Source of the DNA: Octopus bimaculoides
Lineage: Eukaryota
NCBI RefSeq assembly: GCF_001194135.2
Contig: NC_068995.1
Coordinates: forward strand, 6,962,847-7,007,615
Reading direction: 5' to 3'
DNA: 44,769 bases
Positions 3,727 to 44,769 of the stretch are shown one piece after another (the first letter of the stretch is position 1; each line of letters begins with the position of its first letter). Position numbers and translations under genes: made by a program. The notes below the pieces were generated by a model, which did no database searches, was not told the DNA's origin, and saw only the letters and a list, made by a program, of their open reading frames with translations.

Positions 3727-4152
3727 GAGGTGAGACTGTGAGTGCACTCATCTGAGGTGAGACTGGCTGCACTCACACAGGAGGAGACGGGCTGCACTCA
3801 AACAGGGCAGGACGGGCTGCACTCACACAGGACAAGATGGGCTACACTCACACAGGACAGGACGGGCTGCGCTTACACAAGACAGGACGGGCTGCACTCA
3901 CAGAGGATGAGATGGGCTGCGCTCTCATAGGACGAAACGGGCTGCGCTCTCATAGGACGAAACGGGCTGCGCTCACATAGGACGGGACGGGCTGCACTCA
4001 CATAGGACGGGATGGGCTGCACTCACACAGGACGGGATGGGCTGCACTCACATAGGAATGGACAGGCTGTGCTCACATAGGACGAGACAGGCTGCGCTCA
4101 CAGAACGGGACGGGCTGCACTCGCACAGGACGGGTTACACTCACCACAGGAC
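3727..4152. repeat. GC-rich 25-bp minisatellite, about 17 units (GGACGGGACGGGCTGCACTCACAYA)
   Basis: The core recurs with an exact 25-bp period from 3743 to 4093, then after a 2-nt deletion at 4116. Confidence 0.95.
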
Positions 4153-7689: not shown

Positions 7690-8103
7690 AGTGCTGCCTG
7701 ATTGGCACTTGTGCCAGTGGAACGTTAGAAGTGCTATCCAAGTGTGATCGTTGCCAGCGTCGCCTTACTGGCACATGTACCGGTGGCACATGAAAAAACA
7801 ACATTCGAGCGTGGTTGTTGCCAGTGCCGCTGGACTGGCTCCCGTGCAGGTAACCCATAAAAAACACCTTTTGAGCGTGGTCGTTGCCAGAACCACCTAA
7901 CTGGCCCTCGTGCTAGTGACACATAAAAGGCACCCATTACACTCATGGAGTGCTTGGCATTAAGGAAGGGCATCCAGTTGTAGAAACTTTGCCAGATCAG
8001 ATTGGAACCTGGTGCAGCCTTCTGATTCACCAGTCCTCAGTCAAACCGTCCAACCCATGCCAGCATGGAAAGCGGACGTTAAACGATGATGATGATGATG
8101 ATG
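7690..8103 (+). mobile_element. SINE-like family C with internal ~57-bp subrepeats and (GAT)n tail
   Basis: ..TTGGCATTAAGGAAGGGCATCCAGTTGTAGAAAC..CCAACCCATGCCAGCATGGAAAGCGGACGTTAAACGATGATG; other copies at 13191(-), 38262(+) and 44439(-). Confidence 0.9.
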
Positions 8104-9772
8104 GTAGAGAGAGAAAGAGATGTAGTAGCCTTTATTCTTTTCCTAAAGGCTATAAGATCAGTGAATGCAGTGATTTACAGTTTGTAGTTTTTGGTTTTGA
8201 ATTTAAATTCTGTATTGTGTGTGTGTATGTATGTGATTGGTTGGCATGTGTAGTTTGTATGTGATGTGATGTGTGTGTGTGTGTGTGTGTGTACGTAGGT
8301 TGTGTGGTTGTCTTTTTAGCATATGTGTGTGGTGTGTGTATGTAGATTGTCTGTGATTGTGTGGTTGTTTCGTGTGTGTGTGTATACTTGTAGTGTGTGT
8401 GTGTGTGTGTGTGATTATATATTCCACTTTTTACTAGTACGGAACCCATTGTAGAAGTGTTTCAGTGTCAAAAACTACGACCCACAATTTTTTCGTATGT
8501 AGGAAGGTCGGCAGTTGTGGCATGCATGCCTCTCTCGGTGATAAGACAGACGAGGCACGAACACTCAAAGTTAGATAGCAGCGGAATTGGTTCTTCTTTC
8601 ACCAAGAACTTACCACTACCGAATTGCCTCTATACACACACACACACACACACAATATGTAGGTGTGTGTGTGTAAGAGAGAGAGAGCGCACTTCTCCTG
8701 AGGTGAGAGTTATAATAACTTTATTGTTTGATCTTGTGCAACATCAAACAGACTTGGAGTTGTTTGATAAAATGTTTTAGGCTGGGTCAGTATCAAAAAC
8801 AGAACATCTGTAGTATGTGTGTGTGTGTGTGTGTGTGGACAAGAAGGCCACAGTTAATTATAACTGATAATTTTCCTGTCTATTTTAAGGGCAACAACAA
8901 CATTCAACTTTGCCAAATTATATTTGGATGTTATAATGCTACAGTCTCGGTCCCTACATTATTGCACTCTACCCTGGCTCCAACAGCCACCCTCACCCCT
9001 CCCGCCACGAGCATTATCTTTTTCTTTCTTTTTTCTTTTTGTTTATATTTTCGTAATTTTTTTTTAGTTTTTTTCTGAATTTATTTTTAGATCCACTTTA
9101 AGCATGAATTTCACTGAAAATTTCACTATTTGTCTTTGTTCTCAAACACCCTCAACACCACCACACAATCTTCTTCCCACTTCCCACCCCACCCCCATTT
9201 TGTTTTCTTNNNNNNNNNNTTCTCAAACACCCTCAACACCACCACACAATCTTCTTCCCACTTCCCACCCCACCCCCATTTTGTTTTCTTACCCAGCACC
9301 TCCTCCTCCTGGCACTCTTTCGATCAAAGAAAAAAAAAACGAATCTGATTTCAAAAATATCTGAATCATCTTTGTTTGTCATAATCACCATCATCATCAT
9401 CATCATCCTATTTCTGTTGTTGTTTAGTTCCAGGTCAAACCAGCTCATGCAAGCCTATGATCAAAGACATTCCAACCATGACCTTCATTTTTATTTATCA
9501 AGTATCTAAGGTCCCATTATTCCCTCCAATATTATATACCATTTATCTAACAGTTCTGTTACCATGTTTCTGTTAAAATTACTTTGCCGTTTTTTTTCAA
9601 TTATTTTTGAAAATAATAAAGACTTCACTGAAGTAACTTTGTCATTACTAAGCTTTTGGGACATGAATTAGCATCAAATTTTGCTGGAAGGTTTTTAATT
9701 TAATTCATTTTAAATCGGTAAGTTTTGTATCATAGAACCTGATTTGTTTTGGGCAGGCTGGAATCAAAATGG

Positions 9773-37261: not shown

Positions 37262-37516
37262 GTGAGTATTTCCTTTTGTGTATTTCCCTCCAATTTTGAA
37301 GGAAAACAAACCCCCTATTGTTCTCTTTACTTGGTCTCATTGTAACACTTCCACGAATATAATTATCCTGACTCAAACCTTTTCCACTGTCTCCTCTTTC
37401 AGACTTAAGCTTTCGTAATAAGACCCTATGTAGCCCCTTGGCCTGTTGGATGTAGCAGATCAGTAGAGACTGACCCAGGGCTAAACAACAGCTATTGTAA
37501 CTCTAAACAACTATAG

Positions 37517-37559
<43 letters not shown>

Positions 37560-37560
37560 C

Positions 37561-37966
37561 AGGTGCAGGTGTGGCTGTGTGGTTAGAAGCTTGCTTCCCA
37601 ACCACATGGTTCTGGGTTCAGTCCTACTGTGTAGCACATTGGTCAAGTGCCTTCTACTGTAGCCTCGGGTCGACCAAAGCCTTGTGAGTGGATTTGGTAG
37701 ATGGAAACTGAAAGAAGCTTGTTGTGTATATATATGTATGTGTATATATATTTAGCTGTGTGCCTGTGTTTGTTTCCCCACCGTCGCTTGAAAAAACCCG
37801 ATGTTGGTGTGTTTACGTCCCCGTAACTTAGCGGTTCGGCAAAAGATACTGATCGAATAAGTACTAGGCTTACAAAGAATGAGTCCTGGGGTTGATTTGT
37901 TCGACTGAAGGTGGTGCTCCAGCATGGCCGCAGTTAAATGACTGAAACGAGTAAATGAATAAAAGA
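37561..37966 (+). mobile_element. Full-length family A SINE
   Basis: Head, TA/GT tract and tail all present. Confidence 0.92.
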
Positions 37967-37999
<33 letters not shown>

Positions 38000-38014
38000 A
38001 CACAAGCTATATAT

Positions 38015-38545
38015 AAGGCAGTTTGCTGGCTCATTGGTTAGCATGCTGAACAAAACACTTTGCAACATTTTGTCCGTCTTTGTGAGCTGAGTTCAAACTT
38101 TGCCAAGGTCGACTTTGCTTTTTATCCCTTCGGGATCGATAAAATAAGTACCAGTTACATACTGAGGTTGATTTATTTGTCTTACCCACTTCCCCAATAT
38201 TTCAGGCCTTGTGCCTATAGTAGAAAGGGTTATTATTATTATTATTATTATTATTTGGGCACCAATGCTGGTCACTTGTGAAAGATATCCGTGCCGGCGA
38301 CACACATATGGCACTCGTGCTGGTGACACATTAAAGGGTACCTGTGCCGGTGACACGTAAAAGACTTCCAGTACACTCTGTAAAGTGGTTGGCATTAGGA
38401 AGGGCATCTAGCTGTAGAAACCAACCCAAAACAGATGATCGGAGCCTGGTGCAGCTCTCTGGCTTACTGATCGGGGCCCCAGTCAAACCATCTGACCTAT
38501 GTCAACATGGAAACTGGACGTTAAATGATGATGATAATGATGATG
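38015..38545 (+). mobile_element. Family B SINE (38015-38255, (ATT)n tail) followed by family C (38262-38545)
   Basis: Recognisable B head and tail, then C subrepeats and (GAT)n tail. Confidence 0.88.
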
Positions 38546-40014
38546 GTTATTATTATTCTGTATGACACGGCGTCCATTCATTGCAATGAGGCCAGTACCC
38601 ATGTCATACACTGCATCGTTCTCGTTATATAATCTATTAACCTTATCTGCCAAACAGTTGCTTTACCCAGGTCTATTGGCCCTGGCTAACAGTTGAGAAA
38701 AAAGAAAAAAATCTGAATCTTTGGCAAGCTCACCACCACCACCACCATCTCAAGTGTTGGATAGGGCAGAACCAAGTGAGATAGGGGCAAGGTAGTGGGA
38801 GGAACCAATTGCTCACCCTCCTCCTCCTCACATTATCTACACCCCACACACTCTTTTCCTCTCTCACCCTCTCCCTCTCCTCCACCTACATTTGTCTCTT
38901 AATAAACAACTGCTATCATTGACACTAGAAGCCTATTATTCTTTATGAAAGACGTTTTTCACTAAACTTGTCTCTATTTACTGAGTAGGCATTGCTTTCC
39001 GCAGCTTAGATCAGCAGTGCACACGTATGTACAGAGTATGTATGTACACTGAGCGTGTGCGTGCAAATATACAAGTATTCTTTCACCTCTTATTGATCTT
39101 CAAGCTGTCTATAGTTATATATATATATATATACATATANNNNNNNNNNNNNNNNNNNNNNNNNNNNNNNNNNNNNNNNNNNNNNNNNNNNNNNNNNNNN
39201 NNNNNNNNNNNNNNNNNNNNNNNNNNNNNNNNNNNNNNNNNNNNNNNNNNNNNNNNNNNNNNNNNNNNNNNNNNNNNNNNNNNNNNNNNNNNNNNNNNNN
39301 NNNNNNNNNNNNNNNNNNNNNNNNNNNNNNNNNNNNNNNNNNNNNNNNNNNNNNNNNNNNNNNNNNNNNNNNNNNNNNNNNNNNNNNNNNNNNNNNNNNN
39401 NNNNNNNNNNNNNNNNNNNNNNNNNNNNNNNNNNNNNNNNNNNNNNNNNNNNNNNNNNNNNNNNNNNNNNNNNNNNNNNNNNNNNNNNNNNNNNNNNNNN
39501 NNNNNNNNNNNNNNNNTATATATATATATATATATATTGAAAATAAGTTAATATTCTGAAGCAGTGTGTAGATCAGGTTGACTGGATATCTATATTTAAA
39601 TGTACATATATGTATATGCGTGTGTGTATATGTGTGTGTATATATATGTGTGTATATACACGCACACAAATATATGTATATATTTATATATCTGTGTGTA
39701 TGTATGTGTGTGTGTGTGTATATTTTTGTGTATTATCTCCATTGGTTCAGTCAAAGTGCACCCCTCTCAGTTGTAGTACTCAATACAGGATTCAAGTGTA
39801 AAGTTACATATCACTTTTAGTTCAGAAATCCGTGCAGTGACCATTTCAACTTCAGGCCAATATAACGAGCTGAAGCTGAAATGACCATTGTCCTGATTTG
39901 ATTAAAAGAAAGAAAAAAAAGAGATGTGTGTGTTTATATTATATAATATGTGTATGTATGCACACACACACAAATGCATGTGTATGTGTGTATATAAATA
40001 CCTTTCTATTTCTG

Positions 40015-40645
40015 TCTATATCCATCTATTTATCCATCTACCCATCTATTTATCCATCTACCCATCTATTTATCCATCTACCCATCTATTTATCCATCTA
40101 CCCAGATGAATATCCATCTACCCATCTATTTATCCATCTACCCATCCATTTATCCATCTACCCATCCATTTATCCAGCTACCCATCTATTTATCCAGTTA
40201 CCCATCTATTTATCCATCTACCCATCTATTTATCCATCTACTCATCTATTTATCCACTTACCCATCTATTTTTCCATCTACCCATCTATTTTTCCATCTA
40301 CTCATCCATCTACCCATCTATTTATCTATCTACCCATCTATTTATCCATCTACCCAGATGAATATCCATCTACCCAGATGAATATCCATCTACCCATCTA
40401 TTTATCCATCTACCCATCCATTTATCCACCTACCCATCTATTTATCCAGCTACCCATCTATTTATCCAGTTACCCATCTATTTATCCAGTTACCCATCTA
40501 TTTATCCATCTACCCATCTATTTATCCATCTACCCATCTATTTATCCATCTACCCATCTATTTATCCACTTACCCATCTATTTATCCATCTACTCATCCA
40601 TCTACCCATCTATTTATCTATCTACCCATCTATTTATCCATCTGC
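40015..40645. repeat. 20-bp minisatellite, about 31 units (CCATCTATTTATCCATCTAC)
   Basis: Regular 20-bp period; it produces the spurious 253-aa [17 protein letters not shown]. Confidence 0.97.
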
Positions 40646-40791
40646 ATTCAAGTTATTAATATATGTGTTTATTTATCCAAAGAGAAAAAAAAATGTGTAT
40701 TGTGAACCTACATGATTACATAATGTTGCATTCATCATAATCGATATATATCCATACATCACCTTATTTATCTTTTCTTTTCTTCCTTTAG

Positions 40792-40841
40792 GTAAGTGGT
40801 ACATTTTCATACCTTAACACTTCGCTGTGTATCCAGTTCAG
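40792..40841 (+). other. 50-nt exon whose first six bases are a consensus 5' splice site (candidate recursive-splicing exon)
   Basis: 19-nt pure pyrimidine tract, AG|GTAAGT, downstream donor CAG|GTATGT. Confidence 0.55.
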
Positions 40842-41170
40842 GTATGTACCTATGTATGTAGATATGCAGTTATATATCCGTTATCTGTCAATGAAAGGTT
40901 GTTTGTTTACTGTTGAGATTTATTTTCAGTTTTTCTTTGCAGAATTCCTGCTGTCTGCTAACAAAGTGACAAGGCTTCTCTGTTTGCGTCACAACAGTTC
41001 CAACGATGTGTGAACATGTGAGAACTAATGCGTGTATGTTCGAAAGCGCATGTATATGTAATGGGTGTACATTTTATTACACAAATGTGTGTTTGATTAC
41101 TCTTTGTGTAAGTATGTCTGTGTGTGTGTGTGCATAACACGCATACCTGTGTGACTGTTTATGTGTTTAG

Positions 41171-41261
41171 ATGTTCATTCCAGAAAACATAAATGAAGAA
41201 CCTTTGGAAGGTTTTTCAAATCTTCGCACAGTCCCAAATCTGTTGGATTTGGAACATGCCA
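41171..41261 (+). CDS. Candidate coding exon beginning with ATG (MFIPENINEEPLEGFSNLRTVPNLLDLEHA)
   Basis: TGTGTTTAG acceptor, only one open frame, CCA|GTCAGT donor; no homology recognised. Confidence 0.3.
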
Positions 41262-42036
41262 GTCAGTATTATTCTTCCTGGAAGACTCCAGCATTTCTAG
41301 GTTTTTGAATAAATCTCTTGTTTACATAGTGCAGTCCTCTAAAAATAGTGTTTATGAATGAAAATCTATTGACTTGATCAAAGGGCTATAATATCCATAA
41401 TAATTTGTATTTTTCTTTTTCCACAACTTCAGACAAAACTGTCACATCCATGGATAAGGCTATAATTGTGTTGTAAGAAGCTTGCTTTCCGATCTCGAGA
41501 CTCTCTGTCCATCCCACTGTGTGACACTTTGGGCACATGTCTTCTATCGTCTTGGGCTTGTGAATGGATTTAGTAGAAGACTGGCGAACCAGATGGCTGC
41601 ACCAGGCTCCAGTCTGATCTGGCAGAGTNNNNNNNNNNNNNNNNNNNNNNNNNNNNNNNNNNNNNNNNNNNNNNNNNNNNNNNNNNNNNNNNNNNNNNNN
41701 NNNNNNNNNNNNNNNNNNNNNNNNNNNNATATATATATATATATATGTGTGTATATATATATGAGTCTGGTGCAGCCTTCCAGCTTACCGGCCCTGGTCA
41801 AACCGTGCAACCCATGCCAGCATGGACCATGGACATTAGATGAGGATACACACACACACACTTTATATAAATATATATAAATAAAAGTTCATGCTTACAT
41901 TATACTTCGTGTATGCATGCATATATATATATATGTGTGTGTGTGTGTAGGAACATAGATGATACTACAATACTGAGAAACATTGGTAAGACATCGGATG
42001 AAATTGCCCCTGCCTCACCTCTTGGCAGTCAAAGAT

Positions 42037-42605: not shown

Positions 42606-42807
42606 ACAATAAATATTTGAGAAGAGAAAGTCCTATTATATCTATTATACTTCTCCCATCCTTTTCTCTTTTGTGAATTAGGGTGAGCCTCAGTATACTT
42701 TCAGCTATATTTCTTCCACTATCCATCACTATGTTGGCCATGTGCTTAATCCAGAAAGTAAACTAGTCATAGAAAATAATATTTACTCTACTTCTTTGTT
42801 ACAGAAT

Positions 42808-43001
42808 AGGCGTAGGAGTGGCTGTGTGGTAAGTAGCTTGCTTACTAACCACATGCTTCCGGGTTCAGTCCCACTGCGTGGCACCTTGGGTAAGTGTCTT
42901 CTACTATAGCCTCGGGCCGACCAAAGCCTTGTGAGTGGATTTGGGACTGAACCTGGAACCATATAGTTGGGAAGCAAGTTTCTTACCACACAGCCACGCC
43001 T
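42808..43001. mobile_element. Fold-back chimera of two family A SINE 5' parts
   Basis: Forward head and body 42808-42944 fused to an inverted head 42942-43001. Confidence 0.88.
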
Positions 43002-43065
43002 AACAAATTTTAACTTTTGGTTTTTCTACATTCTGAGTGGAAACCTTTATTGTTCTTCTCTCTTA

Positions 43066-43378
43066 GAGATCAGGGAGTCTCTCCAGGTTGTGCTGCAACT
43101 TCTCTGCATTGAGAAGTCACAACTCTGCTTCATTGTGGACATGTGATTAGAATGTCATGGCGAAGAATCCCAAGACGGATGCTTCAAGCTGAGCCAACCG
43201 GCAGGAGACCAAGGCATAGACCAAGGCATAGACCAAGAATGAGATGGTTGGACAATATTCTTAGTCTCTGTTGGTCATGCTTGGGAATGTGACTTTAAAG
43301 TCTGATGAGGGTTACTTCTGAGAGGACCGTATGGAGGAGGTACCTGAGGACTCTGCTCCCATGACTCTATCAGGAATA
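43066..43378 (+). mobile_element. RTE-clade LINE 3' relic, same family as 1365-1710
   Basis: EIRESLQVVLQLLCIEKSQL..GHVIRMSWRRIPRRMLQAEPTGRRPRHRPRHRPRMRWLDNI..VWRRYLRTLLP*, with an in-frame 12-bp duplication. Confidence 0.85.
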
Positions 43379-43690
43379 AAGACCCTCTTTGGTCATGAAT
43401 GACCATGGAATTGCACCTAGAAACTTACTCTCTGGGCAAGGTTGTTTATGGTGAATCAGCAGTCGCCCATGCATAGCAGCCTCCCCTCTCCATGTCACTG
43501 ATGTTATCCATGGGAAAAAAGGTTGATACAATTTGGCACTAGTGATGTTGGTACTCATTTCTACAGATGAGTGAACTGGAGCAATGTGAAATAAAGTGTT
43601 TTGCTCCAGAACACAACATACAGCCCGGTCTAGGAATCGAACTCGCTACCTCATCATTGTGAGCCTGACACTGAGCTATGCAACTTCACT
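43376..43690 (-). mobile_element. tRNA-head CORE-type SINE, family E
   Basis: Reverse homologue of 36029-36345, including CORE-like GAGTGAACTGGAGCAATGTGAAATAAAGTG. Confidence 0.85.
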
Positions 43691-44438: not shown

Positions 44439-44712
44439 CATCATCATCATCTTCATCACCGTTTAACGTCTGCTTTCGATGCTAGCATGGGTTGGACGAT
44501 TTGACTGAGGACTGGTGAAACCAGATGGCTACACCAGGCTCCAATCTGATTTGGCAGTTTCTGCTGCTGGATGCCCTTCCTAATGCCAACCACTCTGAGA
44601 GTGTAGTGGGTGCTTTTACGTGTCACTGGCACGAAGGCTGGTCAGGCAGTACTGGCAACAGCCACGCTCAAAATGATGTATTTTACATGCCACCTGTACA
44701 GGAGCCAGTCCA
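44439..44712 (-). mobile_element. Family C SINE-like element
   Basis: (CAT)n-GTTTAACGTCTGCTTTCGATGCTAGCATGGGTTGG..GGATGCCCTTCCTAATGCCAACC.. Confidence 0.92.
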
Positions 44713-44720
44713 TTATACAT

Positions 44721-44769
<49 letters not shown>

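What the first reader, a model, noticed from the sequence alone, without database searches (positions are those of the whole stretch)
40762..40847. Candidate recursive-splicing (ratchet) site with a cryptic 50-nt RS-exon
A 19-nt pure pyrimidine tract and AG are followed immediately by a perfect GTAAGT, with a second donor CAG|GTATGT 50 nt on. This is the established architecture of recursive sites in long Drosophila and vertebrate introns. The exon has stops in two of three frames. If the 17.7 kb promoter fires rightward, the site would lie about 23 kb into a long 5' region. I know of no description of recursive splicing in cephalopods. Caveat: the next acceptor (40942) is only about 100 nt further on, so this may be an ordinary or alternative UTR exon.
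Basis: partly seen in the sequence, partly recalled or inferred. Interest (0 to 1): 0.7.

Follow-up and report, generated by a model that had tools for sequence, protein, structure and literature searches.

The report
Possible re-splicing site, unproven
A stretch of non-coding animal DNA carries a textbook "splice-in, then splice-out-again" signal followed by a 50-base mini-exon; the sequence is real and rarer than chance gives in this window, but nothing available here shows that it is ever transcribed or spliced.

Summary
A 19-nt pure pyrimidine tract (40771-40789) and AG are followed at once by GTAAGT (40792-40797). CAG|GTATGT lies exactly 50 nt on, and a strong acceptor ends at 40942. With generic splice-site matrices the acceptor ranks 1st of 4499 AGs in the window. 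The AG|GT joint score is the best of 247. It was reached in 2 of 600 global and 0 of 600 local shuffles.

The architecture matches every sequence-level feature published for recursive sites. These are the acceptor|donor juxtaposition, a cryptic exon of about 50 nt, a weaker donor less than 100 nt downstream, and an out-of-frame exon.

None of the decisive features could be tested: plus-strand transcription, a long host intron, junction or lariat reads, and conservation. No coding exon was found on either strand. The 17.7-kb promoter-like block abuts an N gap, so its direction is unknown. A second exon-like unit (40943-41017) only 101 nt downstream suggests a small non-coding exon pair rather than a mid-intron ratchet point. 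Per-window chance rates still imply many chance copies in a multi-gigabase genome.

Verdict: a good candidate, partly supported, of modest interest. If real, it is a new member of a known kind.

The parts
40762..40770 (+). Candidate branch-point region: CTTAT (A at 40766, 25 nt from the 3' splice site) and TTTAT (A at 40770, 21 nt)
   Evidence: YTNAY scan. It lies in a 105-nt AG-free zone upstream of the AG, which is in the top 0.7% of AG-free gaps in the window.
40771..40789 (+). 19-nt pure polypyrimidine tract
   Evidence: It is the only Y19-AG in the window on either strand; Y12-AG occurs 3 times.
40790..40797 (+). AG|GTAAGT: the candidate ratchet point, a 3' splice site juxtaposed with a consensus 5' splice site
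   Evidence: Acceptor PWM rank 1 of 4499, donor rank 14 of 5340, joint score best of 247. Equalled in 2 of 600 and 0 of 600 shuffles.
40792..40841 (+). 50-nt candidate RS-exon (exon-like unit A). Length is not a multiple of 3; stops in 2 of 3 frames
   Evidence: It is the best acceptor-donor exon-like pair in the whole window on either strand.
40839..40847 (+). CAG|GTATGT: downstream donor of the 50-nt unit. It has a U1 mismatch at +4, so it is intrinsically weaker than GTAAGT
   Evidence: PWM score 9.86, rank 26 of 5340.
40842..40942 (+). 101-nt candidate short intron. It ends in TTTTTCTTTGCAG, with an alternative AG at 40928-40929 and a TTTAC branch-point candidate around 40909
   Evidence: The acceptor with first exon base 40943 scores 12.83, rank 9 of 4499.
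40943..41017 (+). 75-nt exon-like unit B. It is closed in all frames when joined to unit A, except for an ATG at 41006 four codons before the donor CAT|GTGAGA (GT at 41018)
   Evidence: The two-exon chain statistic is met only here in the window, and in 0.7% (global) and 2% (local) of shuffles.
40022..40643 (+). Context: a 20-nt satellite (CCATCTATTTATCCATCTAC, about 32 copies) that makes the upstream 0.6 kb strongly pyrimidine-rich on the + strand
   Evidence: GC skew -0.61 for 40001-41000; 68-78% pyrimidine in most 50-nt windows.
17690..17790 (.). It has two GCGCATGCGT (NRF1-like) motifs, GCCGCCATTG (YY1-like) and CCGGAAG (ETS-like), and is locally CpG-rich. Its orientation is unknown, and it abuts a 903-N gap (17804-18706)
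   Evidence: The motif names are from my own knowledge and were not tested.

Best explanation
I think 40771-41023 is most likely a genuine plus-strand splicing unit of a transcript that is non-coding at this point, either a long 5' UTR or a lncRNA. It would consist of two small exon-like units: A (40792-40841, 50 nt) and B (40943-41017, 75 nt), separated by a 101-nt intron.

Unit A starts with GTAAGT. Proposed mechanism:
1. Exon definition across unit A uses the strong acceptor (branch point near 40766-40770, then the Y19 tract and AG) and the CAG|GTATGT donor.
2. Unit A is ligated to an upstream exon. This recreates a consensus 5' splice site, xAG|GTAAGT, at the new junction.
3. That regenerated donor competes with the weaker GTATGT donor 50 nt downstream.
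4. If the regenerated donor wins, a second reaction removes 40792-40942 (151 nt) and unit A contributes zero nucleotides. This is recursive splicing.
5. If the downstream donor wins, the 50-nt unit is included.

On this reading it works like an RS-exon. It is closer to the skippable Ubx-type microexon next to another exon than to a mid-intron ratchet point that cuts a long intron into large pieces.

Shown here: presence, exact spacing, rank and rarity of all the signals. Inferred: transcription, use of any of these sites, the order of the reactions and the outcome of the donor competition.
For: - The acceptor ranks 1 of 4499 and the juxtaposed donor 14 of 5340. The joint score of 26.2 is the best of 247, with the next at 20.8.
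- That joint score was reached in 2 of 600 global and 0 of 600 local shuffles. The full architecture with the second donor arose in 0-0.17% of shuffled windows.
- Independently of the juxtaposition, the chain acceptor-donor-acceptor-donor occurs only here in the real window. It occurs in 0.7-2% of shuffles.
- Unit A is the best exon-like acceptor-donor pair on either strand.
- There is a 105-nt AG-free zone, and branch-point candidates lie 21-25 nt upstream.
- The region 40644-41480 is single-copy within a very repeat-rich window.
- Published definitions fit. RS-exons are short, about 50 nt, poorly conserved and out of frame, and donor competition decides skipping (PMC8605326). Most fly RS sites have a second 5'ss less than 100 nt downstream (PMC6224609).
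- Units A and B are closed in all frames, which fits UTR or lncRNA exons.
Against: - There is no evidence of transcription on either strand.
- No coding exon or protein homologue was found in the window, so no host gene is known.
- The promoter-like block at 17.7 kb is of unknown direction, and its downstream side is an assembly gap.
- A cruder summed-signal cluster statistic is not significant. It was reached in 22% of local shuffles, and the best real cluster is elsewhere, at 25478-25777.
- The thresholds were chosen after seeing the site.
- The matrices are generic human-like values written from memory. They are not MaxEntScan and were not trained on this organism.
- The two donors differ by only 0.55 bits in my scoring, because the exonic part of the regenerated donor is unknown.
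- The upstream satellite makes the + strand locally pyrimidine-rich, which favours acceptor-like sequence.
- Shuffles under-estimate how often real genomes produce good-looking pseudo-exons.
Confidence: 0.4

Rival explanations
1. Chance pseudo-exon. This is a fortuitous juxtaposition of a pyrimidine run, AG and GTAAGT in untranscribed or antisense DNA, next to a pyrimidine-rich satellite and a TATG-rich low-complexity patch. It is never used by the spliceosome.
For: - Per-window chance of acceptor >=12 with donor >=10 at one junction is 1.7-3.3%. With the second donor it is up to 0.17%.
- Scaled to a genome of a few gigabases, roughly 6x10^4 such windows by my arithmetic, that is tens to about a thousand chance sites.
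- GTATGT is very common in this window, at 51 + 52 copies.
- The second donor lies in GTATGTACCTATGTATGTAGATATG.
- The upstream 0.6 kb is a pyrimidine-rich satellite.
- The summed-signal cluster statistic is unremarkable.
- There is no gene, homologue, RNA family or conservation evidence.
Against: - The exact joint score was reached in only 2 of 600 and 0 of 600 shuffles.
- The independent two-exon chain occurs in 0.7-2% of shuffles and only here in the real window.
- The product of the two is about 1e-5 per window before allowing for post-hoc thresholds.
- The pyrimidine tract itself is not a recognisable satellite copy. Only a TATTTATCCA remnant at 40669-40678 aligns.
Confidence: 0.38
2. Ordinary small exon or exons without re-splicing. 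Units A and B are constitutive or alternative 5'-UTR or lncRNA exons. The GTAAGT at the start of A is incidental and is kept silent, for example by exon-junction-complex repression as for annotated RS-exons in vertebrates.
For: - The same splice-signal evidence applies as for the best explanation.
- Hundreds of annotated, mainly constitutive human exons regenerate a 5'ss and are kept included by the EJC (PMC6224609).
Against: - GTAAGT is the optimal donor, and the downstream donor carries a +4 mismatch.
- In flies and in minigenes a stronger regenerated donor leads to skipping (PMC8605326; PMC6224609).
- Whether EJC repression of this kind operates in this lineage is unknown.
Confidence: 0.12
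3. Classical mid-intron ratchet point. The site subdivides a very long intron running from an exon near the 17.7-kb promoter to a coding exon beyond the window. The 50-nt unit is a cryptic RS-exon that is always removed, and the 40943 acceptor is irrelevant.
For: - All sequence-level RS features are met.
- The site would lie about 23 kb from the promoter-like block.
- Long 5' introns are typical of long neuronal genes, including in Octopus bimaculoides (PMC7222433).
- No coding exon was detected in the 23 kb between.
Against: - The direction of the promoter is unknown, and its first exon is unseen because of the N gap.
- A strong acceptor 151 nt downstream plus a donor 75 nt later would be an odd coincidence under this reading.
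- Fly recursive sites concentrate in introns over 40 kb and near their midpoints (PMC6110457). Neither can be established here.
Confidence: 0.1

Closest known systems
Drosophila intronic ratchet points with cryptic RS-exons (e.g. Bx, kuz, Ubx-RP; Duff 2015, Joseph 2018, Joseph & Lai 2021, PMC8605326)
   Same: Tandem acceptor|donor around AG|GT with a long pyrimidine tract and a consensus GTAAGT. The cryptic exon is about 50 nt, out of frame and stop-containing. A second donor less than 100 nt downstream is intrinsically weaker than the regenerated one.
   Different: Fly sites are defined by RNA evidence and by ultraconservation of the core; here there is neither. They sit in very long introns, typically near the midpoint. 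Here a strong acceptor follows after only 151 nt, and the host intron is unknown. The acceptor is TAG rather than the CAG I recall as preferred in flies (from memory, not checked).
Ubx microexons mI/mII and other expressed RS-exons
   Same: A microexon of about 50 nt (Ubx mI and mII are 51 nt) begins with a 5'ss-like sequence. It can therefore be included or removed by re-splicing after ligation to the upstream exon.
   Different: The Ubx microexons are coding, frame-preserving (51 nt) and deeply conserved. This unit is 50 nt, closed in two frames and apparently non-coding, and its conservation is unknown.
Vertebrate RS-exons (cryptic, as in the long genes of Sibley 2015; annotated and EJC-repressed, as in Blazquez 2018, PMC6224609)
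   Same: Exon definition comes first. Competition then follows between the reconstituted RS-5'ss and the exon's own 5'ss, and the stronger RS-5'ss gives skipping.
   Different: From memory, the cryptic vertebrate cases lie in introns of more than 100 kb. EJC dependence is unknown in this lineage, and there are no expression data here.
Intronic pseudo-exons (splice-site look-alikes that are never used)
   Same: Good-scoring acceptor and donor at exon-like spacing in non-coding, repeat-rich DNA with no transcript evidence.
   Different: The scores here are the best in the window. The exact AG|GTAAGT juxtaposition plus a neighbouring second exon-like unit is rarer than typical pseudo-exons in shuffles.

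Membership tests
Recursive splice site (ratchet point) with cryptic RS-exon | [quoted passage not shown] | tested here: met
   Y19-AG|GTAAGT at 40771-40797. The joint PWM score is the best of 247 AG|GT sites, and was reached in 2 of 600 and 0 of 600 shuffles.
Recursive splice site (ratchet point) with cryptic RS-exon | Functional-looking acceptor context: branch point, pyrimidine tract and AG-exclusion zone | tested here: met
   CTTAT and TTTAT lie 25 and 21 nt upstream. The pyrimidine tract is 19 nt, and there is no AG for 105 nt upstream. This is sequence level only.
Recursive splice site (ratchet point) with cryptic RS-exon | A short (about 50 nt) downstream unit bounded by a second 5' splice site less than 100 nt away, allowing exon definition | tested here: met
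   CAG|GTATGT with its GT at 40842 gives a 50-nt unit; the donor ranks 26 of 5340. Criterion taken from PMC8605326 and PMC6224609.
Recursive splice site (ratchet point) with cryptic RS-exon | The regenerated donor is stronger than the RS-exon donor, so the exon is skipped | tested here: inconclusive
   GTAAGT scores 10.41 and CAG|GTATGT scores 9.86 with a generic PWM. The intronic part favours the ratchet donor, since it has no +4 mismatch. Its exonic -3 to -1 bases would come from an unknown upstream exon.
Recursive splice site (ratchet point) with cryptic RS-exon | RS-exon content is out of frame or stop-containing | tested here: met
   The unit is 50 nt with stops in 2 of 3 frames. Joined to the next unit it is closed in all frames. 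This is weakly informative, because most non-coding DNA behaves the same way.
Recursive splice site (ratchet point) with cryptic RS-exon | Lies on the sense strand inside a very long intron of a transcribed gene, typically far from the flanking exons | tested here: inconclusive
   No coding exon or homologue was found on either strand. The promoter-like block 23 kb upstream is of unknown direction and sits next to an N gap. A strong acceptor 151 nt downstream argues against a mid-intron position (PMC6110457).
Recursive splice site (ratchet point) with cryptic RS-exon | RNA evidence: ratchet junction reads, saw-tooth nascent-RNA profile, and lariats starting at the site | not testable with these tools
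   No transcriptome of the source organism is reachable. A metagenome scan for the spliced A-B junction found nothing.
Recursive splice site (ratchet point) with cryptic RS-exon | Evolutionary conservation of the acceptor|donor core above the flanks | not testable with these tools
   No related eukaryote genome is available. An exact-match scan of metagenome contigs for the core found 0 hits.
Expressed RS-exon (Ubx-mI-like, or annotated RS-exon) | An exon that regenerates a 5' splice site at its upstream junction and is included in at least some mature transcripts | not testable with these tools
   The first half is met at sequence level. Inclusion cannot be assessed.
Chance pseudo-exon | Occurs at the frequency expected from composition, with no further exon-like context | tested here: not met
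   Rarer than shuffles at window level. Still, tens to hundreds of such sites are expected genome-wide, and one cluster statistic is not significant. Chance is not excluded.

The most novel reading that the evidence does not exclude
The site is a working recursive splice site in a cephalopod. It would be the first documented outside insects and vertebrates, and would show that re-splicing at regenerated donors is also used in a lophotrochozoan lineage that evolved very long neuronal genes. In the held library no paper mentions recursive splicing together with octopus (0 papers). Only one paper each co-mentions it with squid or cephalopod, and none of these is about the topic.
Probability: 0.3. 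Interest if true: 0.55.

Novelty: new member of a known kind. Interest (0 to 1): 0.3.

Why it matters
Recursive splicing has been demonstrated in Drosophila (hundreds of sites) and in vertebrates (a handful of cryptic sites plus many annotated RS-exons). Cephalopods independently evolved large genomes and long, intron-rich neuronal genes (PMC7222433). A validated site would extend the mechanism to a third major animal lineage. It would also allow a test of whether long-intron processing converged on the same solution.

On its own, though, a single motif match adds little. The mechanism is generic to the spliceosome, so specialists would expect such sites to exist. The value lies in a genome-wide, RNA-supported census, for which this site could serve as a positive-control candidate.

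Tried and rejected
1. Looking for a host gene.
   - All unique stop-to-stop ORFs of at least 35 aa were concatenated by strand (4149 aa for +, 4709 aa for -). Both searches of 5.8 billion proteins returned no hit at E<=1e-3.
2. Identifying the organism.
   - Translations of the window's SINE-like repeats hit only two UniParc or MetaClust proteins, UPI0006956AA4 and UPI000695481C, through SINE-derived segments at 76-84% identity.
   - Neither is on record in the contig index.
   - A cephalopod origin is therefore plausible but unverified.
3. Rfam (gathering threshold) and tRNA scans of the window found nothing.
4. Exact-match scans of metagenome contigs for the core and for the hypothetical spliced A-B junction gave 0 hits.
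5. Is the site part of a repeat? The region 40644-41480 has no other copy in the window apart from microsatellite matches. The pyrimidine tract is not an alignable copy of the adjacent 20-nt satellite.
6. Minus-strand reading.
   - The purine run could mimic a retroelement polypurine tract. I found no reverse-transcriptase-like ORF and no repeat around it.
   - Minus-strand splice signals nearby are weak.
   - I rejected this reading.
7. RNA structure. The fold of 40730-40960 pairs AGGUAAGU with AUUUAUCU upstream, but z = -1.66 and 12 of 200 shuffles fold as well. This is not significant.
8. A summed-signal cluster statistic was not significant: 22% of local shuffles reached it, and the best real cluster is at 25478-25777. 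I therefore dropped the claim that the local density of signals is exceptional by that measure. I kept only the more specific juxtaposition and chain statistics.
9. Short repeats and palindromes around the site are trivial only.

Full report
**What is in the sequence**

The window is a draft eukaryotic scaffold with 14 runs of N totalling 5335 bases. It is dense in microsatellites, minisatellites and SINE-like repeats. It is CpG-depleted, with 502 CG against 1275 GC.

At the finding the sequence reads ...CACCTTATTTA TCTTTTCTTTTCTTCCTTT AG|GTAAGTGG.... The elements are:
- a 19-nt pure pyrimidine tract at 40771-40789;
- AG at 40790-40791 and GTAAGT at 40792-40797;
- CAG|GTATGT with its GT at 40842, exactly 50 nt after 40792;
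- the next strong acceptor, TTTTTCTTTGCAG, ending at 40942.

Regex scans confirm each coordinate. The 50-nt unit has stops in two of three frames.

**Is it more than chance?**

Y12-AGGTAAGT occurs once in the window on both strands, with none in 100 dinucleotide shuffles. A looser pattern, Y8-AGGTRAGT with one mismatch, also occurs once with 0.32 expected.

I scored all AG and GT dinucleotides on both strands with generic metazoan splice-site matrices. The matrix values are written from memory. They are not MaxEntScan and were not trained on this organism.

| Signal | Rank |
|---|---|
| Acceptor at 40791\|40792 | 1 of 4499 |
| Juxtaposed donor (GT 40792) | 14 of 5340 |
| Second donor (GT 40842) | 26 of 5340 |
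| Acceptor giving first exon base 40943 | 9 of 4499 |
| Donor CAT\|GTGAGA (GT 41018) | 122 of 5340 |

The joint AG|GT score of 26.2 is the best of 247 juxtapositions; the next is 20.8.

Shuffle results:
- A joint score of at least 26.2 was reached in 2 of 600 global and 0 of 600 local (300-nt block) dinucleotide shuffles.
- Acceptor >=12 with donor >=10 at one junction arose in 1.7-3.3% of shuffled windows.
- Adding a second donor within 25-100 nt lowered this to 0-0.17%.
- Independently of the juxtaposition, an acceptor-donor-acceptor-donor chain at exon-like spacing occurs only here in the real window. It occurs in 0.7% (global) and 2% (local) of shuffles.

Other supporting details:
- The AG is preceded by a 105-nt AG-free zone, in the top 0.7% of such gaps in the window.
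- Branch-point-like CTTAT and TTTAT lie 25 and 21 nt upstream.

Cautions:
- A cruder statistic, the sum of all strong signals in 300 nt, is not significant. It was reached in 22% of local shuffles, and the best real cluster lies at 25478-25777.
- The thresholds were set after seeing the site.
- The 0.6 kb upstream is a pyrimidine-rich 20-nt satellite.
- GTATGT is very common in this window.
- By my arithmetic, per-window rates of 10^-3 to 10^-2 translate into tens to about a thousand chance sites in a genome of a few gigabases.

**Context**

The region 40644-41480 is single-copy within the window.

No protein-coding exon could be recognised anywhere:
- I concatenated the unique ORFs of at least 35 aa for each strand.
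- Neither concatenation gave a hit in 5.8 billion proteins.
- Rfam and tRNA scans were empty.

Units A (40792-40841) and B (40943-41017) joined are closed in all three frames. The one exception is an ATG at 41006, four codons before the donor. If these are exons, they are non-coding or 5'-UTR exons.

It lies at 17690-17790 and holds two GCGCATGCGT motifs, GCCGCCATTG and CCGGAAG. Its local CpG observed/expected ratio is 1.13. It abuts a 903-N gap, and nothing tells which way it fires. The motif names come from my own knowledge.

The cephalopod origin could not be verified. The only external matches are SINE-derived segments in two UniParc proteins that are not in the contig index. Scans of metagenome contigs for the core, and for a spliced A-B junction, found nothing.

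**Comparison with what is known**

Published definitions of recursive sites:
- PMC8605326 describes fly ratchet points as tandem acceptor|donor pairs in long introns. Each encompasses a cryptic RS-exon that is short, about 50 nt, and flanked by a downstream donor.
- In the same paper the core is ultraconserved, the exon content is poorly conserved and out of frame, and donor competition decides skipping.
- PMC6224609 reports that most of the 197 fly sites have a second 5'ss less than 100 nt downstream. Humans have about 10 efficient intronic sites, but hundreds of annotated RS-exons kept included by the exon junction complex.
- PMC6110457 reports that recursive sites occur in most fly introns over 40 kb, tend to lie near intron midpoints, and are about twice as conserved as control AGGT sites.

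The present site meets all of the sequence-level criteria. The criteria that actually define recursion could not be tested here: RNA intermediates, conservation and a long host intron. The position criterion leans against a classical ratchet point. If unit B is a real exon, the site lies 151 nt from the end of the intron, not near its middle.

**Most likely mechanism**

I put about 0.6 on the region being a genuine plus-strand splicing unit. Within that, I favour a re-splicing-capable microexon (0.4):
1. Exon definition across the 50-nt unit.
2. Ligation to an upstream exon.
3. Regeneration of xAG|GTAAGT at the junction.
4. Competition with the weaker GTATGT donor.
5. Either removal of 40792-40942 in a second step, or inclusion of the 50 nt.

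The rivals are:
- a chance pseudo-exon (0.38);
- ordinary small exons whose regenerated donor is kept silent (0.12);

Only the presence, spacing, rank and rarity of the signals are shown. Transcription, site usage and reaction order are inferred.

**Novelty and score**

No paper in the held library links recursive splicing with octopus. Only one unrelated paper each co-mentions it with squid or cephalopod.

If real, this would be a new member of a known kind, not a new mechanism. As it stands it is an attractive but unverified motif match.

The decisive tests are strand-specific nascent or total RNA-seq with lariat reads at 40792, cross-species conservation of the core, and a sense-versus-antisense census of the motif in long introns.

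Noticed in passing
window 25820-25982: A palindromic element. Terminal inverted arms CACCCGCACGATCTTCACTAGGG ... CCCTAGTGAAGATCGTGCGGGTG enclose head-to-head telomere-like repeats: TTAGGG-like units, then CCCTAA-like units, meeting at GGAATTCC. It could be a foldback or MITE-like element, or a relic of a telomere fusion.
   Followed up: partly
window 17690-17790: A promoter-like block with two GCGCATGCGT motifs (NRF1-like), GCCGCCATTG (YY1-like) and CCGGAAG (ETS-like). Its local CpG observed/expected ratio is 1.13 in an otherwise CpG-depleted window. It sits directly against a 903-N assembly gap (17804-18706), so the transcription start, first exon and direction are all unseen.
   Followed up: partly
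window 25636-25776: The second-best AG|GT juxtaposition in the window. A T-run plus AG|GT has acceptor score 15.7 and donor score 5.1. A donor 141 nt downstream gives an open exon-like unit on the + strand, with no protein homologue.
   Followed up: partly
window 40022-40643: A 20-nt satellite, CCATCTATTTATCCATCTAC, of about 32 copies at 86% match. It is strongly strand-asymmetric (pyrimidine-rich on +) and ends about 150 nt upstream of the candidate site.
   Followed up: partly
window 9139-9290: Two identical copies of about 71 nt flank a 10-N gap. This is most likely a scaffolding or gap-closing artefact rather than a real tandem duplication.
   Followed up: no
window 3761-4134: A GC-rich 25-nt minisatellite, GACGGGCTGCACTCACACAGGACGG, of about 15 copies at 83% match. 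It is the most CpG-dense stretch of the window.
   Followed up: no
window, many places (e.g. 7737-8261, 19582-20199, 30153-30640, 36030-36323, 37506-38562, 42682-43025, 43373-43685, 44459-44767): Several SINE-like repeat families, with 22 and 18 ORF-level copies for the two largest. Translated pieces match internal segments of two database proteins at 76-84% identity. One is a tyrosine-phosphatase-domain protein (UPI0006956AA4) and the other a DEAD-box helicase (UPI000695481C). This suggests exonised or mis-annotated SINE fragments in those gene models.
   Followed up: partly
window 41308-41313: AATAAA lies about 290 nt downstream of exon-like unit B, after weak acceptors at 41184 and 41232. 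It would allow a short three-exon polyadenylated transcript end. However, by my estimate from base composition the hexamer is expected about once per kb by chance in this AT-rich sequence.
   Followed up: no
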